A program made the translations under genes and the position numbers. Under the pieces are notes generated by a model. It searched no databases. It was not told the origin of the DNA and saw nothing but the letters and a program-made list of their open reading frames with translations. A DNA stretch of 64,000 nucleotides, from contig OZ251253.1 of NCBI GenBank assembly GCA_965240325.2, forward strand, positions 806,001 through 870,000, in the 5' to 3' direction. Below, piece by piece: positions 11,591 to 19,220 of this stretch. Positions within the stretch are counted from its first letter, which is position 1. Each line of letters starts with the position of its first letter. The stretch comes from Rebecca billardiae RCC1528 (lineage: Eukaryota > Protista > Haptophyta).

Positions 11591-12453
11591 AGCGAGATAA
11601 GGCGATGTAACCTGTAACCACCGCCATTCGACTTACCCTCGCCAAAAAAAGCGCAACACCTCCATGCTGGGTAACCACTCGAATAATAACAACTAGCAAC
11701 GAATATACCAGCACCAAGACAATAAAACCCGACCACGGCGAGACGACTATAATTCGACTACCGGAGCAGTCTTAAAACATATATTTCAACTACACCGCGA
11801 TATTATAATTAAATAAAGGCCCGAGTAGTCTTAAAACATCGATCTATTTTATTCCGCAGCATTATTAAAATATGTGCGTATCAGTGTACAATAATATATT
11901 TTATTCCGTAGCATTATTAAAATACGTTCGAATTATACACTGATATTTTATTATAAAATTTCGGAGCAGTCTTAAATTGTAAGTACTAGAGCAGTCTTAA
12001 AATTTATTTGAAAACAATTAAATATTTTGAATGGCATATTTTGAATGGCATAAAAATATGCGGCCGTTAAAATTAAAATCCGTTCATGCACCTTTGTAAA
12101 AAATTAACTAATTTATTAAATACGTGTATTATCACTCATATCGATATTGGATTATTGATGTATCATAACACTACACGTACAGGCACATAGGTGTGCATCC
12201 ATATTTAATCGCATGTACCCGTGTGCTACATGTTCCAGGATTTAGTTATCGTAATTCAGGAGATCATAGTAACCTGTGCATGACCCACATAGGGAGATCG
12301 TTTTTCCCCTCACTAGCCCGCCCAGCTCCCATGCCCCGAACGCCCGTGATCCCGGCTCGCCCTGCCCTGTCTCGCACCCCTGTCTCCGCTGTCAGCCTGT
12401 CTGTCAGTCGCACTCACGGCCGCGCGTCGGACCGTCAGGCCGACTCACGGGCC

Positions 12454-15400
12454 TAGGTGGGCCACTGGCGAAATTAGAATTGGAAAAATGTTTTTGAAGC
12501 TTGTTCAGCCGTCGGTTTAGCGCGGCATTTATCGCATTTTCTCGTGCGCCCGGATCACCGCGAGCGCGCGCCCGAGAGCACCGGATTGCCCCGATTGGAG
12601 ACGGCCGTCGAGAGGAGGAGGGCCAGGGCGACCTGGACGTGCGCGTCGTCGGCGGCGCGATGCGCGGGCATGCCGCGCTCGGCCGCCGCCGCGGCTGGGC
12701 CGGACGGGCAGGCTGGTCGTTCTCCCGGACTCCAACCGCCACCGCCGTTCAAATTTTGAACGGTGCCTCTGCGTTGACCAGTACACGACCGACCTCTTTG
12801 AATCGACATGTGCAACTTCCCCCAACCACGTGCTGCCGACGGCCAGAACGCGCTCGCGCAGTCGGCGGGGGCGGTCGCGCAGGATGTACCTGCTATCCCG
12901 GCCACGTCCATCACCTCGGAACCGGCCGCCGGCCCCGGCACCGCCGCCGCGCTGGCGGGCGGCACGGGCAACTCAAACGGGCCTGCCGGCGGCCCGCGCA
13001 CGGATGGAGCCACGCAGGGCTCGGACGACCTCGGCGAGCGCGCGCGCGTGGTGCTGCGCACGGCGCCGCTCCCCCAGCTTCGCTCCGGCGGGCAGCGCCC
13101 GCTCCTCGAGCTCGACTCCTCCTCCGCGCGCACGCTCTTGCAGGTCGTGAAGGGCATCTTCTCGAAGGACGGCTCGGATGAGTTCCTGCACGAGATCCGC
13201 GGGCACCTCGAGAAGCTGGGCGTGAGCTCGGCGCAAGTCGCACTGGCGATGATCGCGGCCGACGCTCTCGGCGCTCCCCTCGACAAGGTCATCGGCACGG
13301 GCGAGCCGGGCCCGTACGGCAAGCTCTGCTCGGTTGGCAAGTCGCTCGAGTCGGCGATCGAGCGGCACGAGCAGAAGCTGTCGGACATCGCGAAGAAGCA
13401 CCGCAAGCGCAAGGGGGCGGACAAGGAGGCGATGGACGCGGATCTCGCGGCGGCAGCCGCGTCCTTCAAGCACCCCTTCACGCGTGAGAAGTACGACGAG
13501 GCGGTGCGCGCGGCCGTCGGCCTCTCGAGCGCAGCGCGGTGCACGCCGCCAATGGCCTGGCTGCCGGCGCAGCAGTCGTCGTCGATCGGGGTCGCACGCG
13601 CTTCCGGGCGCAAGTCGTCGCCGGGCGAGGGCGCCGCGAGCGGGCTGCTCGCGCCGTCCGCCGTGAACAAGGCGCCGACGCCGCTCCCGGCCGTCAAGCG
13701 CGCGTTGACGATCTCCGAGGGCAAGAAGAAGGAGGAGCAGGCCGAGTTCCCGCTGCCGCTCCCCTTGTTCAACTGGGTGGCCGAGCTGGGGCAGGAGAAC
13801 GAGCGCGTGGCGGCCGCGGCGCGCAAGCTGAACGGGCTGCTCGACGAGGAGCGCGCAGCGCGCGCGGCCGAGTCCTCACGGCGGGAGCAGGCGGAGGCGC
13901 GCGTGCAGCGCGCAATGGACGACGCGGCCGCCGCGCGCTCGGCAGAGGCAAAGCGCACGGCGGCCGAGCTCAAGGCGGCGCGCTCGGCGACGAAGAAGGA
14001 GGAGCAGCTGCGAGCGACGGCGGTGGACGAGCGCGACTCGACGATGCTCGCAGCCTTCCGCAGCGACTCCAAGGCCGCCGAGTTCGAGCAGCGCGCCAAG
14101 AAGCTCGAGCAGGAGCTGAAGGACTCGACTGCGCGTGAGGCGGCGCTCGGCGCCGAGGTGAACGCCAAGGCGGAAGCGGAGGACGCGCGGGTCAAGGAGG
14201 TCGACAGGCTGAAGAAGGAGAACGTGGGGCTCCACAAGTTTGCGGCGGAGCAGATCGCGCTGCGTCAGGTCGCGGAGGCCCAGGCGCAGACGGCGACGGC
14301 CGCGTCCGCTTTGCTGACGGCGCGCGCGGAGCAGGCGGAGCGGCGGCTGGCGAGCGTGCGCAGCGAGCTCGCCGCAGCGACGAGCCGCGCCGAGACCGCC
14401 GAGCAGAGCGGGCGCGAGCGCGACCAGAAGGTGTCGGCGCTGACGACTCAGGTGGAGGCGCGTGCCCGGCTCCGCGACCCGAGTACGCAGGCCGCCGCGC
14501 TGCTCGACAAGACCAACCGCCTCGAGATCCAGCTGAGCGCGGCACACGAGCAGGCGGCTCGCGCGGAGACGGCGGCACAGCGCGCGGTCAAGTCGGCGGA
14601 GCACAAGCTCAAGGAGGACAAGCGGCAGAACCGGCTGACCGCCAAGAAGGCGAAGAACGGCGCGAAGGTGCTCGTGCACGCGGCGCAGGCTCTGCAGCGC
14701 GCCGCTGTGAAGGAGAAGAACGACGAGTCGAGTCTCAGCCGAGCCCACGCCGCGACCCTCCAGGCCGAGCTCGAGAAGGGCCGGCTCGCGGTGCGCACGA
14801 TCGTCCAGCTGAGGGCGGAGCTGGCGGAGGCGCGCCGCATCACGCACCCGAACGCGGCCGAGATGCGCCGCAGAGGTGCGTGCGCGTGCGCGTCGCCGGC
14901 GCGCGCCCCGCGGATGGTCCGCACCCGTCGTGCCGAGCCCCGCGCTCGGCGCGCGCTCGCCGCGGCCGAGCGCCGCGGCCGAGCGCGCCGCGAGGCCGCG
15001 CGTGCCGAGCGCGCCGCGCCGCGCGCGCGCGCGCGCGCTTGTGCACAGCCGTCTGACGCCAACCCTGCCCGCCCACGGCGTGCCCACGCCCACTGCCTCG
15101 CGGCTGTGTGCCCGCGTCGCCATCCGCAGCTGCCGAGATCGACGCCGTCTACATGGAGATGCTCACACAGAAGGGCTTCTCTCCTGCGCACTGCGTGTAC
15201 GCGGTCGAGCGCGTCGTCGAGCGGATCGCCAAGGTGACGCTGCCCGTCAAGTACTTCAAGGGGAAGCGGCTCAAGATGGGCCTTCGGCAGCGCACTTCGG
15301 TGCAAAGCCTGCGCAGCGTCGCCGACTCCTTCTGCGACATCAAGAACGGCCTCGAGGCGGCGGACGCCGTCATCCAGGCGAAGCGAGCCCGCCGCCCTGT

Positions 15401-18400
15401 CGCCGTCTCGATCGGCGAGGACGACGGCAGCTGCGCCGGCCGCCACATGAAGGTAGTCGTCGCGGACTTCGGCCAGGGCCCGAGGGTGGTGGACGTGGTA
15501 CCGATCACCGGGCGCGAGACGGCCAAGGAGGCGGCCGTGTTCATCCAGAGCGCCTTCTCCAACCTCAACAAGGCCACGGACACGCTGCTGAAGCACTGCC
15601 GTCTGAGCGAGACGGAGTTCACCGAGGTGCACGGAATCGATCTCGACGCGGCGGAGGAGACCTTCATCGGGCTGTGGGTCGTCACGCAGGCCGTGACCGA
15701 CTCTGCGAGCGTCGCCCAGGCCACCGTGCGTGCGACCGAGGACCTCAAAAGGATCGAGTCGATGGAGATTGAGATGAACTGCATGCGCGAGCGCGTGCTG
15801 AGCGGCGTGCTCGGTGACGACGACGTCGCCGAGGGCAAGAAGCCGTTGGTCCTGCTGGCGGCCAACGTCGCTGACGACGGGCGCGTGCGCATCGACCTGA
15901 AGGCGTTTCAGTTCCCGGAGGCGCCCGAGGCCACCGACGACATGGTGACCGACGATGAGCAGCACGAGCAGCGCCGGGCCGCCGACTCCGCCGCGATCCG
16001 AGTCGAGTATGACGGCGCGTGGGAGAGGACGATCAAGGCGATGACCGAGTGGCAGCGGCACAAGACGCCGAAGCGGTGGCAGCGGGTGCTCGAGTCCATC
16101 GAGTACATCAATTGCCTCCTGCACGCGTGCGTGCACGCCGTCAACGAGGGCTCGGACGCGGTGGAGGAGATGCTCCGCGAGGCGCTGCCCGCTGGCTTCA
16201 TCGACGCGCGCTACACCGAGCTGTCGGGCTCGGCGCCGTCGGCCACCAAGGACGGCAAGGTGAAGAAGGACAGCGGCGGCTACTCCCTCCGCAGCCGGCC
16301 GCTCAACCACCTCATCCACGCGATGACGAAGATGTTCGCGCAGGTGGCGACGAAGGACTGGAGCCAGTACAAGGAGTTCGTGCAGTTCGTCATGAACCGC
16401 TACCCGGAGAAGACGGACAAGGAGATCCGCTCGCTGTGCCGCGGCCTCGGCCGTACGTGTGGAGCGCGCGGCGGCTCGACCACGCTCAACTGCACCGCCG
16501 CCTGCCGCCTCGCGCCGCTTTGGGTCGAGTACACGGAGTGGCTGATGCAGCAGCCGAAGAAGACGCTCTCCGCCACGCACAAGTACATCTACAAGTGCCT
16601 CAAGCAGCCCGAGTACATGGCCGCCATCTACGCCAAGGGCGTGTGCGGCCCGTCGCTCTACGTGCAGACGCTCGCCGCGTTCGAGCGCGTGCAGAAGGAG
16701 CGCACCATGGCGACCGAGCTGCCCAAGATCTGCCAGCGCGTGTACGAGTTCTGCAAGTCTGTCGCCGCGGACCCGATGCCGTTCATGCGCCGCGAGGTGA
16801 CGCTCTTCCCGAACCAGCCGCGCAACAAGCAGGTGGACGAGCTGCTGTACGAGAAGTGCCACCCGTGGCGGCAGGGCGCGCACCGGACCGTCGAGTGCTG
16901 CGACGAGCTGGTCACGAAGATGGTGGGCGCCTTCCACGGCGGCTTCGCCAAGAAGTTCAACCACTTCACCGTGCGCTGGCAGAAGGAGCTCGCGGACCCC
17001 GAGGACCCGCTGCGCGAGCACCTCGGCAAGCTGTGCGACCTCGACAGCACTAGCAAGGATGCGATGAGGAACGGCGTGTGCACGGGCTCGGCCTTCGAGC
17101 GTCCGATGGGCATGGCGGCCGAGAAGCGCAAGCGAGCGCTCACGCTGACGAACGCGAACATCTGCCACCTTGTCAAGGCGTCGGCCAACAAGGTGGGCAC
17201 GTGGGCGCTGGACGAGCTCGAGGCCAAGCTGCTACCGGTGGCGATGCAGGCCGCGAAGGAGCTCAGCGCGTACAAGCGCGCGATCTACCCGACCGAGCTG
17301 AGCCGGTGGCGCGCGGATCTCGCCAAGATCTTGCCCGAGATCGAGGCCGGCATCGAGCGGCGCGACGCGGCGGAGAAGTCGAAGGCCGACCGCGAGACGC
17401 GCATCCGCGAGGAAGTCGCGCCGACGCGCTTCAGCTCGTGGTCGCAGTGCCTCGAGTGCACGACGAAGGAGCTGATCGATCAGATCCAGGTGTTCGTGCT
17501 GATCGACGGGAACAAGTCGGCGCCGACCAGGTGGTCAATGTCGAAGGAGGACGCGATGATCGCGCTGGCGAAGCTGCTCGAGGAGAAGTACGCGCAGCCG
17601 GCGCGCGACTGCCCGTATGAGCAGCTGCTGGCGGCCGCCGAGGTGCGTGTGGACGCGAGCGCGCGCGCGCGCTATCACCGTGCGCGCCGACCGCGCGGCA
17701 GCGCGATACGAGCGATCGACAACTCACGTGCGCGCCGGCCGCGCCACCTGCGCCGACTATGGCTACGTGCGCGCAGGCGAAGGCGAGGCGCAGCCCTGAG
17801 GCTGGGTCCGAGCCGCCGAGCAAGAAGAGGAAGAAGTCCAAGACCAAGACTCGCGTGGCTGCCGAGGATGAGCATGAGGTGCGCGGCCTGCACGGCTCTC
17901 GTGTCGTGAAGCGTGTCGTCGAGTCGACGCGCGAGCGGCTCGTGGTCGAGGCGCTGGTGAGCTGGGTCGCGACGCACGGGGTGCACTGGCCGGCGAGCTG
18001 GGAGCCCATCACGATGTTTCCGTTTGGCCCGGATAACGACGAGATGCTCAACGAGTGTCTCATCGTGGACGAGGAGGATGAGAGCGTTCTCGCGCAGGAC
18101 GACAAGGTGAACAAGCTGATCGCCAAGCCGCCTGCGGTCGGGGAGCGCTTCGTCTTCAACCTCGTCACCGGCGGCTGCTCGGCGGGCGTCGTCCTTGCCG
18201 TCTCGGACGACTCGGTCACGCTGCACATCGCTGCGGGCCCCGAGCCGGTCAAAGTCCCACGCGCCAACATCGTGAGCGCCGCGCCGGGGCGCGCGCTCGC
18301 GGTGAGCAAGGGCAAGTACGTCCGCGCGCTGCTGCACAGCGGGTGCGAGGGCAAGGAGGCCCGGCGGAGCTGGGTCTATGGCACGATCGTGGGCGTGCTC

Positions 18401-18730
18401 ACCGGCGGCGAGATCGCCTCCGTCAGGTTCGAGCGCGAGCGGGCACCGACGGCCATGTGCGTGTACGACCTGCAGGACGCCGAGACGCGCGAATGGCTGG
18501 CGTGACGCGTGTCTCCCGGGAGCCACTCGGCCTCGGGCAGTGCCGTCGAGCGCGCGCGTGTGTCGGGGGGTCAATGTTGGCGGCGGATATCGCTCTAGCA
18601 GCCCTGGGCCACCTCTTAGGACCCCCTGAGACCGAAAGTAGTGAGAAACCGACCGTCAGGCATGTACCTAGGCGTCCGCGGATATAATATATCTGATGGC
18701 CAGGGCCCCGGAGCCAGTGCGGCCCACCTA
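12454..18730 (+). mobile_element. Autonomous-looking hAT-like DDE DNA transposon (6.3 kb)
   Basis: Imperfect TIRs TAGGTGGGCC--ACTGGC (12454) and GCCAGTGCGGCCCACCTA (ends 18730). TCACGG is present at 12445-12450 and 18731-18736. The left flank ccgtcaggccgactcacgg continues as the downstream repeat unit. The element encloses a transposase gene. Confidence 0.8.
12808..18505 (+). CDS. ~1769-aa DDE transposase (hAT-like, CxxH) with N-terminal coiled coil, SAP-like segment, chromodomain and Tudor-like domain; exons 12808-14875, 15130-17642, 17777-18505
   Basis: Introns GT14876..AG15129 and GT17643..AG17776 join three ORFs in frame (5310 nt). Motifs SIGEDDGS, AVTDSASV, NCLLH and FERPMG fit D, D, CxxH, E. 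Chromo-like VKRVV..EALVSW..SWEP. Tudor-like KGKYVRALL..WVYGTIVGV..ASVRFE. Confidence 0.8.
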
Positions 18731-19110
18731 TCACGGCGGCGTCACTCTGGTCGCCGGGTATCGGCCGCGATTAGCTAGTAGTGAGACTACTAGTAGTCTC
18801 ATTACTAGCTGTCTGACTATAGGGGGACCGGTCCCCTCCGGACCCCCTATAGGGGGTCCGTCAGGCCGACTCACGGCGGCGTCACTCTGGTCGCCAGGGT
18901 ATCGGCCGCGACAGCTAGTAGTAGTGAGACTACTAGTAGTCTCATTACTAGCTGTCTGACTATAGGGGGACCGGTCCCCTCCGGACCCCCTATAGGGGGT
19001 CCGTCAGGCCGACTCACGGCGGCGTCACTCTGGTCGCCAGGGTATCGGCCGCGACAGCTAGTAGTAGTGAGACTACTAGTAGTCTCATTACTAGCTGTCT
19101 GACTATACGG
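18731..19110. repeat. ~2.6 tandem copies of a 140-143-bp palindrome-rich unit upstream of the tRNA
   Basis: TCACGGCGGCGTCACTCTGG starts at 18731, 18871 and 19014. Internal palindromes AGCTAGTAGTGAGACTACTAGTAGTCTCATTACTAGCT and GGACCCCCTATAGGGGGTCC. Confidence 0.9.
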
Positions 19111-19136
19111 GACCGGCCCGCCGGCACCCTCCGTGC

Positions 19137-19218
19137 GGTACCATGGCCGAGCGGTCCAAGGCGGCAGGTCCAGGTCCTGTTCTCTTCGGAGTCGCAGGTT
19201 CGAATCCTGCTGGTGCCA
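19137..19218 (+). tRNA. trnL-CAG: tRNA-Leu (anticodon CAG)
   Basis: Acceptor GGTACCA/TGGTGCC plus discriminator A, D arm GCCGAGCGGTCCAAGGC, anticodon arm GCAGG-TCCAGGT-CCTGT, long variable arm, T arm GCAGG-TTCGAAT-CCTGC. Confidence 0.93.
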
Positions 19219-19220
19219 CA

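What the first reader, a model, noticed from the sequence alone, without database searches (positions are those of the whole stretch)
12454..18730. Giant hAT-like transposase fused to chromodomain and Tudor-like readers, inserted ~400 bp upstream of a tRNA gene
Seen: an intact 3-exon, ~1769-aa gene between short TAGG-starting TIRs. It has a ~350-aa coiled coil, D/D/CxxH/E motifs, a SAP-like segment, an NLS (KKRKKSK), a chromo-like domain and a Tudor-like domain. Established: hAT transposases are typically 600-900 aa with a BED finger and 8-bp TSDs; chromodomain targeting is classic for chromovirus integrases; tRNA-proximal targeting is known for Ty1/Ty3, TRE and Dada. Here only 6 bp (TCACGG) are duplicated, offset from the left TIR by 3 extra nt (GCC). 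Inference: a divergent DNA-transposon lineage that may read histone marks to choose targets, possibly near Pol III loci.
Basis: partly seen in the sequence, partly recalled or inferred. Interest (0 to 1): 0.75.

Follow-up and report, generated by a model that had tools for sequence, protein, structure and literature searches.

The report
Chromatin-reader hAT-like transposon, 7-bp duplications
This is a real, intact cut-and-paste jumping gene of a very divergent hAT-like family whose giant enzyme ends in a chromodomain-like module and two Tudor barrels; it does not aim at tRNA genes, and the odd "6 bp + GCC" junction is a scar of a failed excision of the kind hAT enzymes leave.

Summary
Positions 12454-18730 are a TIR-bounded element with a frame-consistent three-exon, 1769-codon gene. 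A paralogous empty site on contig 15 proves the insertion.

- **No sequence-level hAT link:** there is no hAT Pfam signature and no BED finger.
- **Reader tail:** exon 3 is a basic patch, a divergent chromodomain and two Tudor barrels. Relatives carry the same tail in one continuous reading frame.
- **Duplication length:** it is 7 bp, exact in 17 of about 29 insertions, most of them copies of a 1.9-kb non-autonomous family with the same ends.
- **The "6 bp + GCC" junction:** it is TCACGGC with two inserted bases. The same rule fits five other junctions and is what a flank hairpin reopened and rejoined would give, as in Ac/Ds footprints.
- **tRNA targeting:** not supported; only this copy lies near a verified tRNA.

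The scan had already reported this family on other DNA of this genome. Histone-guided targeting remains inference.

The parts
12445..12453 (+). Left copy of the 7-bp target-site duplication TCACGGC, with two inserted bases (G12451, C12452) between its 6th and 7th base
   Evidence: Sequence. The empty site on contig 15 reads ...GACTCACGGCGGCGTC.... The hairpin rule predicts TCACGGGCC exactly.
12454..12469 (+). Left terminal inverted repeat TAGGTGGGCCACTGGC
   Evidence: The first 10 nt (TAGGKGGGCC) are shared with subfamily B, with the 1.9-kb non-autonomous family and with a metagenomic relative.
12470..12807 (+). 5' subterminal region / leader before the start codon
   Evidence: 68-70% DNA similarity to the same region of the subfamily-B copies.
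12808..14876 (+). Exon 1 (689 codons + 2 nt). It holds a conserved N-terminal segment (about aa 102-250, nt 13111-13557) and a long helical, coiled-coil-like region (about aa 325-689, nt 13780-14874). It has no zinc finger (3 Cys).
   Evidence: 29% identity to subfamily B over aa 1-607. aa 102-250 are 30% identical to the metagenomic relative L047. No Pfam hit.
14877..15130 (+). Intron 1 (GT..AG), containing a (CG)n-rich tract
   Evidence: Frame arithmetic and splice motifs. Tandem repeat at 14932-15038. No RNA evidence.
15131..17642 (+). Exon 2: transposase core. The RNase H fold plus all-alpha insertion domain spans nt 15393-17219. Conserved residues are D97 (15420-15422), D190 (15699-15701), C328/H331 (16113-16124) and E656 (17097-17099). 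The helix-turn-helix 'SAP-like' tail is at nt 17433-17591.
17643..17776 (+). Intron 2 (GT..AG)
   Evidence: Frame arithmetic. Relatives P0010, P0012, P0013 and P0017 carry core and tail in one uninterrupted frame.
17777..18505 (+). Exon 3 with stop. It holds the basic patch KKRKKSK (17822-17842), a chromo-like domain (17873-18058), Tudor-like barrel 1 (18128-18295) and Tudor-like barrel 2 (18308-18484).
18713..18730 (-). Right terminal inverted repeat (reverse complement TAGGTGGGCCGCACTGGC)
   Evidence: The truncated copy on contig 12 shares this end at 87-97% identity, and similarity stops at ...GGCCCACC.
18731..18737 (+). Right, unmodified copy of the 7-bp target-site duplication TCACGGC

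Best explanation
An autonomous cut-and-paste DNA transposon of a deeply divergent, hAT-like lineage.

**Protein, about 1769 aa from three exons.**
- An N-terminal region without a zinc finger, followed by a long helical (probably oligomerising) region.
- A DDE RNase H core split by a Hermes-type all-alpha insertion domain, with a CxxH motif.
- A basic patch (probable nuclear import signal).
- A divergent chromodomain and two Tudor barrels.

**Shown.**
- The element is an insertion, because an empty site exists.
- The family's ends are TAGGKGGGCC.
- The family makes 7-bp duplications and has moved recently.
- The core has the Hermes fold.

**Inferred from junction scars.** Cleavage follows the hAT route. 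The strand carrying the transposon 5' end is nicked one base into the flank, and a hairpin forms on the flank. When one end is cut and then rejoined to the same element (an open-and-shut joint), two palindromic bases remain. That is the window's 'GCC' anomaly.

**Inferred only.** The chromo/Tudor tail tethers the transposase to methylated histones and biases where it acts. Insertion near the tRNA gene is incidental.
For: **Insertion.** Contig 15 carries the left flank (at least 170 bp) running straight into the right flank.

**Mobility.**
- A 97%-identical truncated copy lies on contig 12.
- Two subfamily-B copies are 97.7% identical and have clean 7-bp TSDs.
- The TIR pattern occurs 40 times against 0 for the control.
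- A 1.9-kb non-autonomous family has copies 92-99.8% identical.
- 17 exact 7-bp TSDs were found.

**Motifs.** D97, D190, CxxH and E656 are conserved across 90 sequences.

**Tail.**
- Profile against chromodomains, E 7e-10.
- Pfam Chromo in 7 family members.
- Tudor fold.
- The tail is present in at least 10 relatives.

**Junction rule.** It was met in 5 of 5 two-base cases and in one one-base case. [quoted passage not shown] Flank hairpins for hAT: PMC6900584 and PMC5499845.
Against: - No sequence-level link to hAT. There are 0 Pfam hits for the window protein, no hAT family among the 90 relatives at E<=1, and no Hermes hit by profile at E<=10.
- No BED finger.
- The TSD is 7 bp, not 8.
- There are no solved structures of Dada, MuDR or Kolobok transposases to compare with, so the match to Hermes cannot exclude them.
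- Splicing and expression were not tested.
- The window's chromodomain has His where the first cage aromatic usually sits, and an insertion near the third, so methyl-lysine binding is uncertain.
- Three of the scar junctions share the same bases (AGT), so they are not fully independent tests of the rule.
Confidence: 0.78

Rival explanations
1. The element belongs to another superfamily of the C/DxxH group (Dada, MuDR, Kolobok or P), or to a superfamily of its own, and resembles Hermes only because Hermes is the only well-matching solved structure of that group.
For: - TSDs of 6-7 bp are the Dada value (PMC3706591; PMC8869645).
- No hAT sequence signature was found.
- Flank hairpins are also made by MULEs and Transib (PMC5499845).
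- ESM Atlas nearest clusters are unnamed eukaryotic families, and hAT-type clusters score only 0.75-0.76.
Against: - Dada has no TIRs, has DxxH, has CCCC and CCHC zinc fingers, a D-to-E spacing of 176 aa, and inserts inside small RNA genes. None of this holds here.
- P element and Transib structures score far below Hermes (6.2 and 5.8 against 13.6).
- The junction scars are centred on the complement of the flank base, as in Ac/Ds.
Confidence: 0.17
2. The element targets Pol III genes: the reader domains or another part steer insertion to the upstream side of tRNA genes.
For: The window copy sits 406 bp upstream of a verified tRNA-Leu.
Against: - No Rfam-verified tRNA lies near the contig-12 fragment, near the two subfamily-B copies, or near the 15 non-autonomous copies with context.
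- The paralogous empty site has none within 1.5 kb.
- TSD sequences are diverse.
Confidence: 0.03
3. The chromo/Tudor tail does not choose targets. It serves something else: keeping the transposase on silent chromatin where its own copies lie, countering or exploiting host silencing, or acting as a plain nuclear or chromatin retention module.
For: - The window's aromatic cage is incomplete.
- Insertion sites show no shared repeat context.
- Flanks are only moderately GC-poor (about 0.6 against 0.72), as any intergenic DNA might be.
Against: - The tail is conserved across distant relatives, with canonical chromodomains in several, so it is under selection for some chromatin contact.
- Chromodomain tethering of integration is established for retrotransposons (Gao et al. 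2008, cited in 10.1101/2021.11.30.470311).
Confidence: 0.3
4. It is a domesticated host gene derived from a transposase and is no longer mobile.
For: There is only one full copy of subfamily A. The protein is very long and carries chromatin domains like many domesticated transposases.
Against: - It has TIRs, a TSD and an empty site.
- A 97%-identical fragment sits at another locus with the same right end.
- Sister subfamily B and the non-autonomous family are recently mobile.
- The left junction scar implies that a transposase has cut this copy.
Confidence: 0.03

Closest known systems
hAT superfamily (Hermes, Ac/Ds, Tol2)
   Same: - A DDE RNase H core interrupted by a large all-alpha insertion domain, with Hermes as the clear best structural match.
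- A CxxH motif after the second Asp.
- An E in an 'ER' motif near the C-terminal end of the core.
- Short TIRs beginning TAGG.
- Junction scars of the Ac/Ds type.
   Different: - 7-bp instead of 8-bp duplications.
- No BED zinc finger.
- No detectable hAT dimerisation-domain signature.
- No HMM-level similarity.
- The protein is two to three times longer, with a roughly 350-aa helical region and a chromo plus double-Tudor tail.
Dada superfamily (Kojima and Jurka 2013, PMC3706591)
   Same: 6-7-bp duplications, membership of the C/DxxH group, large intron-containing transposase genes, and one insertion here near a tRNA-Leu gene.
   Different: Dada lacks TIRs, has DxxH and two zinc fingers, has a short D-to-E spacing, and inserts at fixed sites inside small RNA genes. 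This family has clear TIRs, has CxxH, has no zinc fingers and inserts at dispersed sites.
Chromodomain-bearing mobile elements (chromoviruses and MAGGY; hAT-Chromo fusions in the sponge Ephydatia, 10.1101/2021.11.30.470311; Tudor-bearing Gypsy-10_Ec32 of Ectocarpus, PMC12477816)
   Same: A histone-reader module fused to the C-terminal side of the integrating enzyme.
   Different: Here the enzyme is a DNA transposase, and the module is a chromodomain plus two Tudor barrels. The Ectocarpus authors state that theirs was, to their knowledge, the first TE reported with a Tudor domain, and it is a retrotransposon.
Open-and-shut joints of V(D)J recombination and Ac/Ds excision footprints
   Same: Palindromic (P) bases next to the cleaved border, explained by a hairpin on the flank that is opened off-centre and rejoined.
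   Different: Here the scars sit at junctions where the element is still in place. They occur at about a quarter of the insertions examined.

Membership tests
hAT superfamily | RNase H-like DDE core interrupted by a large all-alpha insertion domain (Hermes architecture) | tested here: met
hAT superfamily | CxxH motif after the second catalytic Asp | tested here: met
   C328 is present in 28 of 30 aligned sequences and H331 in 26 of 27. It lies 138 aa after D190 because of a poorly conserved, low-confidence insert.
hAT superfamily | C-terminal hAT dimerisation domain signature (Pfam PF05699 / IPR008906) | tested here: not met
   No Pfam hit at E<=1. No family member hits it. A genome-wide PF05699 search at E<=10 finds only two other loci. 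The structural alignment does run to Hermes residue 609, so the fold may be kept.
hAT superfamily | N-terminal BED zinc finger | tested here: not met
   Exon 1 has 3 Cys and no Pfam hit.
hAT superfamily | 8-bp target-site duplication | tested here: not met
   17 exact 7-bp TSDs, one 6-bp TSD and no 8-bp TSD among about 29 two-ended insertions.
hAT superfamily | Excision through a hairpin on the flanking DNA, with footprints centred on the complement of the base next to the element | tested here: met
   Indirect evidence from sequence only. Six junctions obey N-[comp(Z) comp(N)]-Z|TIR or its one-base form. The rule is as described for Ac/Ds (PMC5873905). There is no biochemistry.
Dada superfamily | Site-specific insertion inside multicopy small RNA genes | tested here: not met
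   Insertion sites are dispersed and unique. Only one copy is near a verified tRNA, and it lies outside the gene.
Dada superfamily | No TIRs; DxxH; N-terminal CCCC and C-terminal CCHC zinc fingers | tested here: not met
   Clear 16-18-bp TIRs, CxxH and no Cys clusters. Criteria are taken from PMC3706591.
Dada superfamily | 6-7-bp target-site duplication | tested here: met
Chromodomain | Sequence match to chromodomain profiles and a three-strand plus helix fold | tested here: inconclusive
   - The family profile hits CDYL, MPP8 and HP1 chromodomains at E 7e-10 to 1e-7.
- Pfam Chromo passes its threshold in paralog L023 and in 7 relatives.
- The window's own exon 3 has no Pfam hit, but it aligns in that block with the invariant Trp (W63) and is predicted as three strands plus a helix.
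Chromodomain | Aromatic cage for methyl-lysine | tested here: inconclusive
   His34 replaces the first aromatic, W63 is kept, and the third position lies in a lineage-specific HWPxSW insert. Binding was not tested.
Tudor / Agenet (Royal family) tandem domain | Two SH3-like five-strand barrels matching solved Tudor domains | tested here: met
   - Foldseek probability 1.0 to FMRP, FXR, 53BP1 and ADCP1 tandem domains.
- Weak profile hits to KDM4C (E 0.011) and SETDB1 Tudor domains.
- This is fold only; ligand binding was not tested.
SAP domain | Match to the SAP profile | tested here: not met
   No Pfam hit at E<=1. Only a conserved helix-loop-helix is seen.

The most novel reading that the evidence does not exclude
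This is a separate, superfamily-level branch of the C/DxxH transposases with 7-bp duplications, no zinc finger and hAT-type hairpin chemistry. From its origin it has used a chromodomain plus double Tudor to read histone methylation and steer a DNA transposase to marked chromatin. That would be a DNA-transposon counterpart of chromovirus targeting.
Probability: 0.25. Interest if true: 0.8.

Novelty: new variant of a known kind. Interest (0 to 1): 0.55.

Why it matters
Targeting by chromatin readers is established for LTR retrotransposons. For cut-and-paste DNA transposons it is known only from a few domain-fusion surveys.

This family offers a natural DNA transposase with a conserved chromo plus double-Tudor tail, defined ends, a recently active non-autonomous partner family and an intact candidate autonomous copy. 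Histone-guided integration by a DNA transposase therefore becomes directly testable.

The junction scars give a rare sequence-only read-out of cleavage chemistry: a flank hairpin with a one-base offset. They also suggest frequent abortive, one-ended cutting.

The work also shows that a hAT-type core can be invisible to current sequence profiles.

Tried and rejected
**Searches that returned nothing or were closed**
- Pfam on each exon: nothing.
- phmmer of exon 2 against PDB: nothing.
- Word-indexed protein search with exon 2: nothing.
- Profile of the core against PDB sequences: no transposase.
- ESM Atlas on the exon-1 N-terminal part: nothing.
- The window protein alone found no metagenome relative.

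**Ideas rejected**
- tRNA targeting was rejected. ARAGORN hits near other copies were not confirmed by Rfam and are taken as false positives in GC-rich DNA.
- I first read the extra bases as a 9-bp TSD with mismatches, as donor-flank carry-over, or as ordinary P-nucleotides from a border nick. None of these fits all the junctions, whereas the one-base-offset hairpin rule does.

**Not explained or not done**
- The metagenomic relative L047 shows no TSD.
All searches and folds were done exon by exon, by reference.
Full report
**What is there**

The window is very GC-rich (0.72 overall). Earlier notes of this scan call the genome a haptophyte-like alga; I did not test that.

Positions 12454-18730 are bounded by TAGGTGGGCCACTGGC and the reverse complement of TAGGTGGGCCGCACTGGC. 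The proposed gene model is frame-consistent:
- exon 1, 12808-14876
- intron 1, GT..AG
- exon 2, 15131-17642
- intron 2, GT..AG
- exon 3, 17777-18505
- 1769 codons in all

I never submitted the joined protein.

**It is an insertion, and the family is mobile**

Contig 15 holds a paralogous stretch in which at least 170 bp of the window's left flank run straight into the right flank, reading ...GACTCACGGCGGCGTC.... This is an empty site.

In the genome I found the following:
- one full copy, the one in the window;
- a 1.64-kb 5'-truncated copy on contig 12, 97% identical and sharing the right end;
- a sister subfamily B with two 6.8-kb copies on contigs 10 and 11. They are 97.7% identical to each other. 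Their protein is 29-52% identical to the window's over all three exons, including the exon-3 module;
- two more distant paralogs, on contigs 7 and 11.

The terminal pattern TAGGKGGGCC(0-3)CACTG occurs 40 times against 0 for the reversed control. Most hits are ends of a non-coding family of about 1.9 kb. Its copies are 92-99.8% identical and share only the TIR with the autonomous elements.

A complete relative from another organism sits on two metagenome contigs, L047 and L048. Its ends are TAGGGGGGCCAG. The two copies are 99.35% identical and diverge exactly after ...CCCCCCTA.

**Target duplications**

- Subfamily B has clean 7-bp TSDs, CCATCAT and ACGGATT.
- Fifteen non-autonomous copies have exact 7-bp TSDs and one has 6 bp.
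- In total, 17 of about 29 two-ended insertions have an exact 7-bp TSD, and none has 8 bp.
- The TSDs are diverse and 43% GC, with at most a weak C at position 2.

The window has TCACGG+GCC|TIR at the left and TIR|TCACGGC at the right. Five other junctions are odd in the same way.

Read as a 7-bp TSD whose base next to the TIR is Z and whose next base is N, each odd junction is N-[comp(Z) comp(N)]-Z|TIR:
- window: G-[GC]-C
- L036: G-[TC]-A
- L030, L037 and L043: G-[AC]-T on the other strand
- one junction has the one-base form

A script confirmed all six predictions. A seventh junction has the same two bases plus a 2-nt loss.

This product is expected under three conditions:
1. The strand carrying the transposon 5' end is nicked one base into the flank.
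2. The flank 3'-OH makes a hairpin.
3. The hairpin is opened two bases from its tip and rejoined to the same transposon end, which still carries Z.

[quoted passage not shown] Flank hairpins are established for hAT, Transib/RAG and MULEs (PMC6900584; PMC5499845). A nick exactly at the border would give N-Z-[comp(Z) comp(N)], which is not seen.

So the window's duplication is 7 bp, TCACGGC, carrying the scar of an aborted one-ended excision. This is inference from sequence. Three of the cases share the same bases, and all have N = G, so the second inserted base is a weaker test than the first. The one-base offset of Hermes is from my own knowledge and was not read here.

**The core**

- No exon has a Pfam hit at E<=1.
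- The word-indexed search found nothing.
- A profile of exon 2 plus paralog pieces found 84 proteins among 1.84 billion, all unnamed and from metagenomes. In the 90-sequence alignment, D97, D190, C328xxH331 and E656 are conserved.
- The AlphaFold model (pLDDT 82, pTM 0.72) shows three strands, a helix, a fourth strand bearing D190, a long all-helical insert, and a helix bearing E656.
- Foldseek's top hits are all Hermes (probability 0.99).
- An independent search of 48,161 chains gives Hermes 13.6, P element 6.2 and Transib 5.8.

The fold is therefore hAT-like. Sequence profiles do not see it: no hAT Pfam family is hit in any of the 90 members, and Hermes is not hit by profile at E<=10. There is no BED finger. 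No Dada, MuDR or Kolobok structure exists for comparison.

**The tail**

- A profile of exon 3 with relatives hits CDYL, MPP8 and HP1 chromodomains at E 7e-10 to 1e-7. It hits KDM4C and SETDB1 Tudor domains weakly.
- Pfam Chromo passes its threshold in the contig-11 paralog and in seven relatives.
- The exon-3 model (pLDDT 86) has a three-strand-plus-helix unit followed by two five-strand barrels.
- The window's chromodomain is divergent. His replaces the first cage aromatic, the invariant Trp is kept, and there is an insert near the third cage position.
- The tail follows the core within one uninterrupted frame in P0010, P0012, P0013 and P0017. It is present in at least ten relatives. It is therefore an old part of the protein, which argues that exon 3 is joined to exon 2 here.

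**tRNA**

The tRNA-Leu at 19137-19219 is real. No Rfam-verified tRNA lies near any other copy examined, and none lies near the empty site. Pol III targeting is not supported.

**Insertion context**

Flanks average about 0.6 GC and share no repeats. This fits intergenic DNA and says nothing decisive about chromatin.

**Known or new**

- Fusions of hAT transposases with chromodomains have been reported from a sponge in a survey (10.1101/2021.11.30.470311).
- A Tudor domain in a TE was reported as a first in 2025, in a Gypsy element (PMC12477816).
- I found no description of this family in the papers searched.
- This scan had already reported sister copies in the same genome with the same reading.

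- the empty site;
- the 7-bp rule over many insertions;
- the non-autonomous partner family;
- the explanation of the junction anomaly;
- the rejection of tRNA targeting.

Noticed in passing
G000 contigs 21-39, loci L030-L044; junctions L049-L088: A non-coding transposon family of about 1.9 kb. Its ends are TAGGTGGGCCCACTGGCYACTGTG... and ...GGCTGTGGGCCCACCTA. It has at least 20 copies, 92-99.8% identical, with 7-bp TSDs. It shares only the TIR with the autonomous elements, most closely with subfamily B. Longer variants of 3.1, 5.4 and 5.9 kb exist.
   Followed up: partly
window 18731-19116: A 143-bp tandem repeat of 2.7 units starts exactly at the element's right border and runs to the tRNA-Leu gene. 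Each unit contains two long palindromes. Apart from a 45-bp match on contig 15, it is unique to this locus.
   Followed up: partly
G000:C3:4353739 (L053/L054): A junction with a 7-bp TSD (CAATCAG) followed by six extra bases, TACTAG, before the TIR. The two-base hairpin rule does not explain it.
   Followed up: no
L023:6895-9189 (G000 contig 11, about 2.61 Mb) and L022:4997-7213 (contig 7, about 4.09 Mb): Distant paralogs of the transposase (23-27% identity in the core) with the same tail. The contig-11 one has a canonical chromodomain (YYVERV...YLVEWKGY...TWE) that passes Pfam's threshold.
   Followed up: partly
L047 (Ga0181565_10011506) and L048 (Ga0181566_10019676): A complete relative of subfamily A/B from another organism in two metagenome samples. 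It is 6.5 kb and 66% GC, with TIR TAGGGGGGCCAG. No target duplication is visible at the one copy with both flanks.
   Followed up: partly
L019:7669-7762, L024:1215-1297, L022:6959-7035, L039:348-425, L041:5049-5145: ARAGORN tRNA calls in GC-rich DNA that the Rfam tRNA model does not confirm at its gathering score. They are probably false positives.
   Followed up: yes
L045 (G000:C17:765118-765351): The only match in this genome to the canonical hAT dimerisation domain above Pfam's cut-off. It contains a stop codon and is probably a decayed ordinary hAT element.
   Followed up: no
P0004: One metagenomic relative of the core carries an N-terminal GNAT acetyltransferase domain (E 1e-13). This may be another chromatin-related fusion, or a gene-call artefact.
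   Followed up: no
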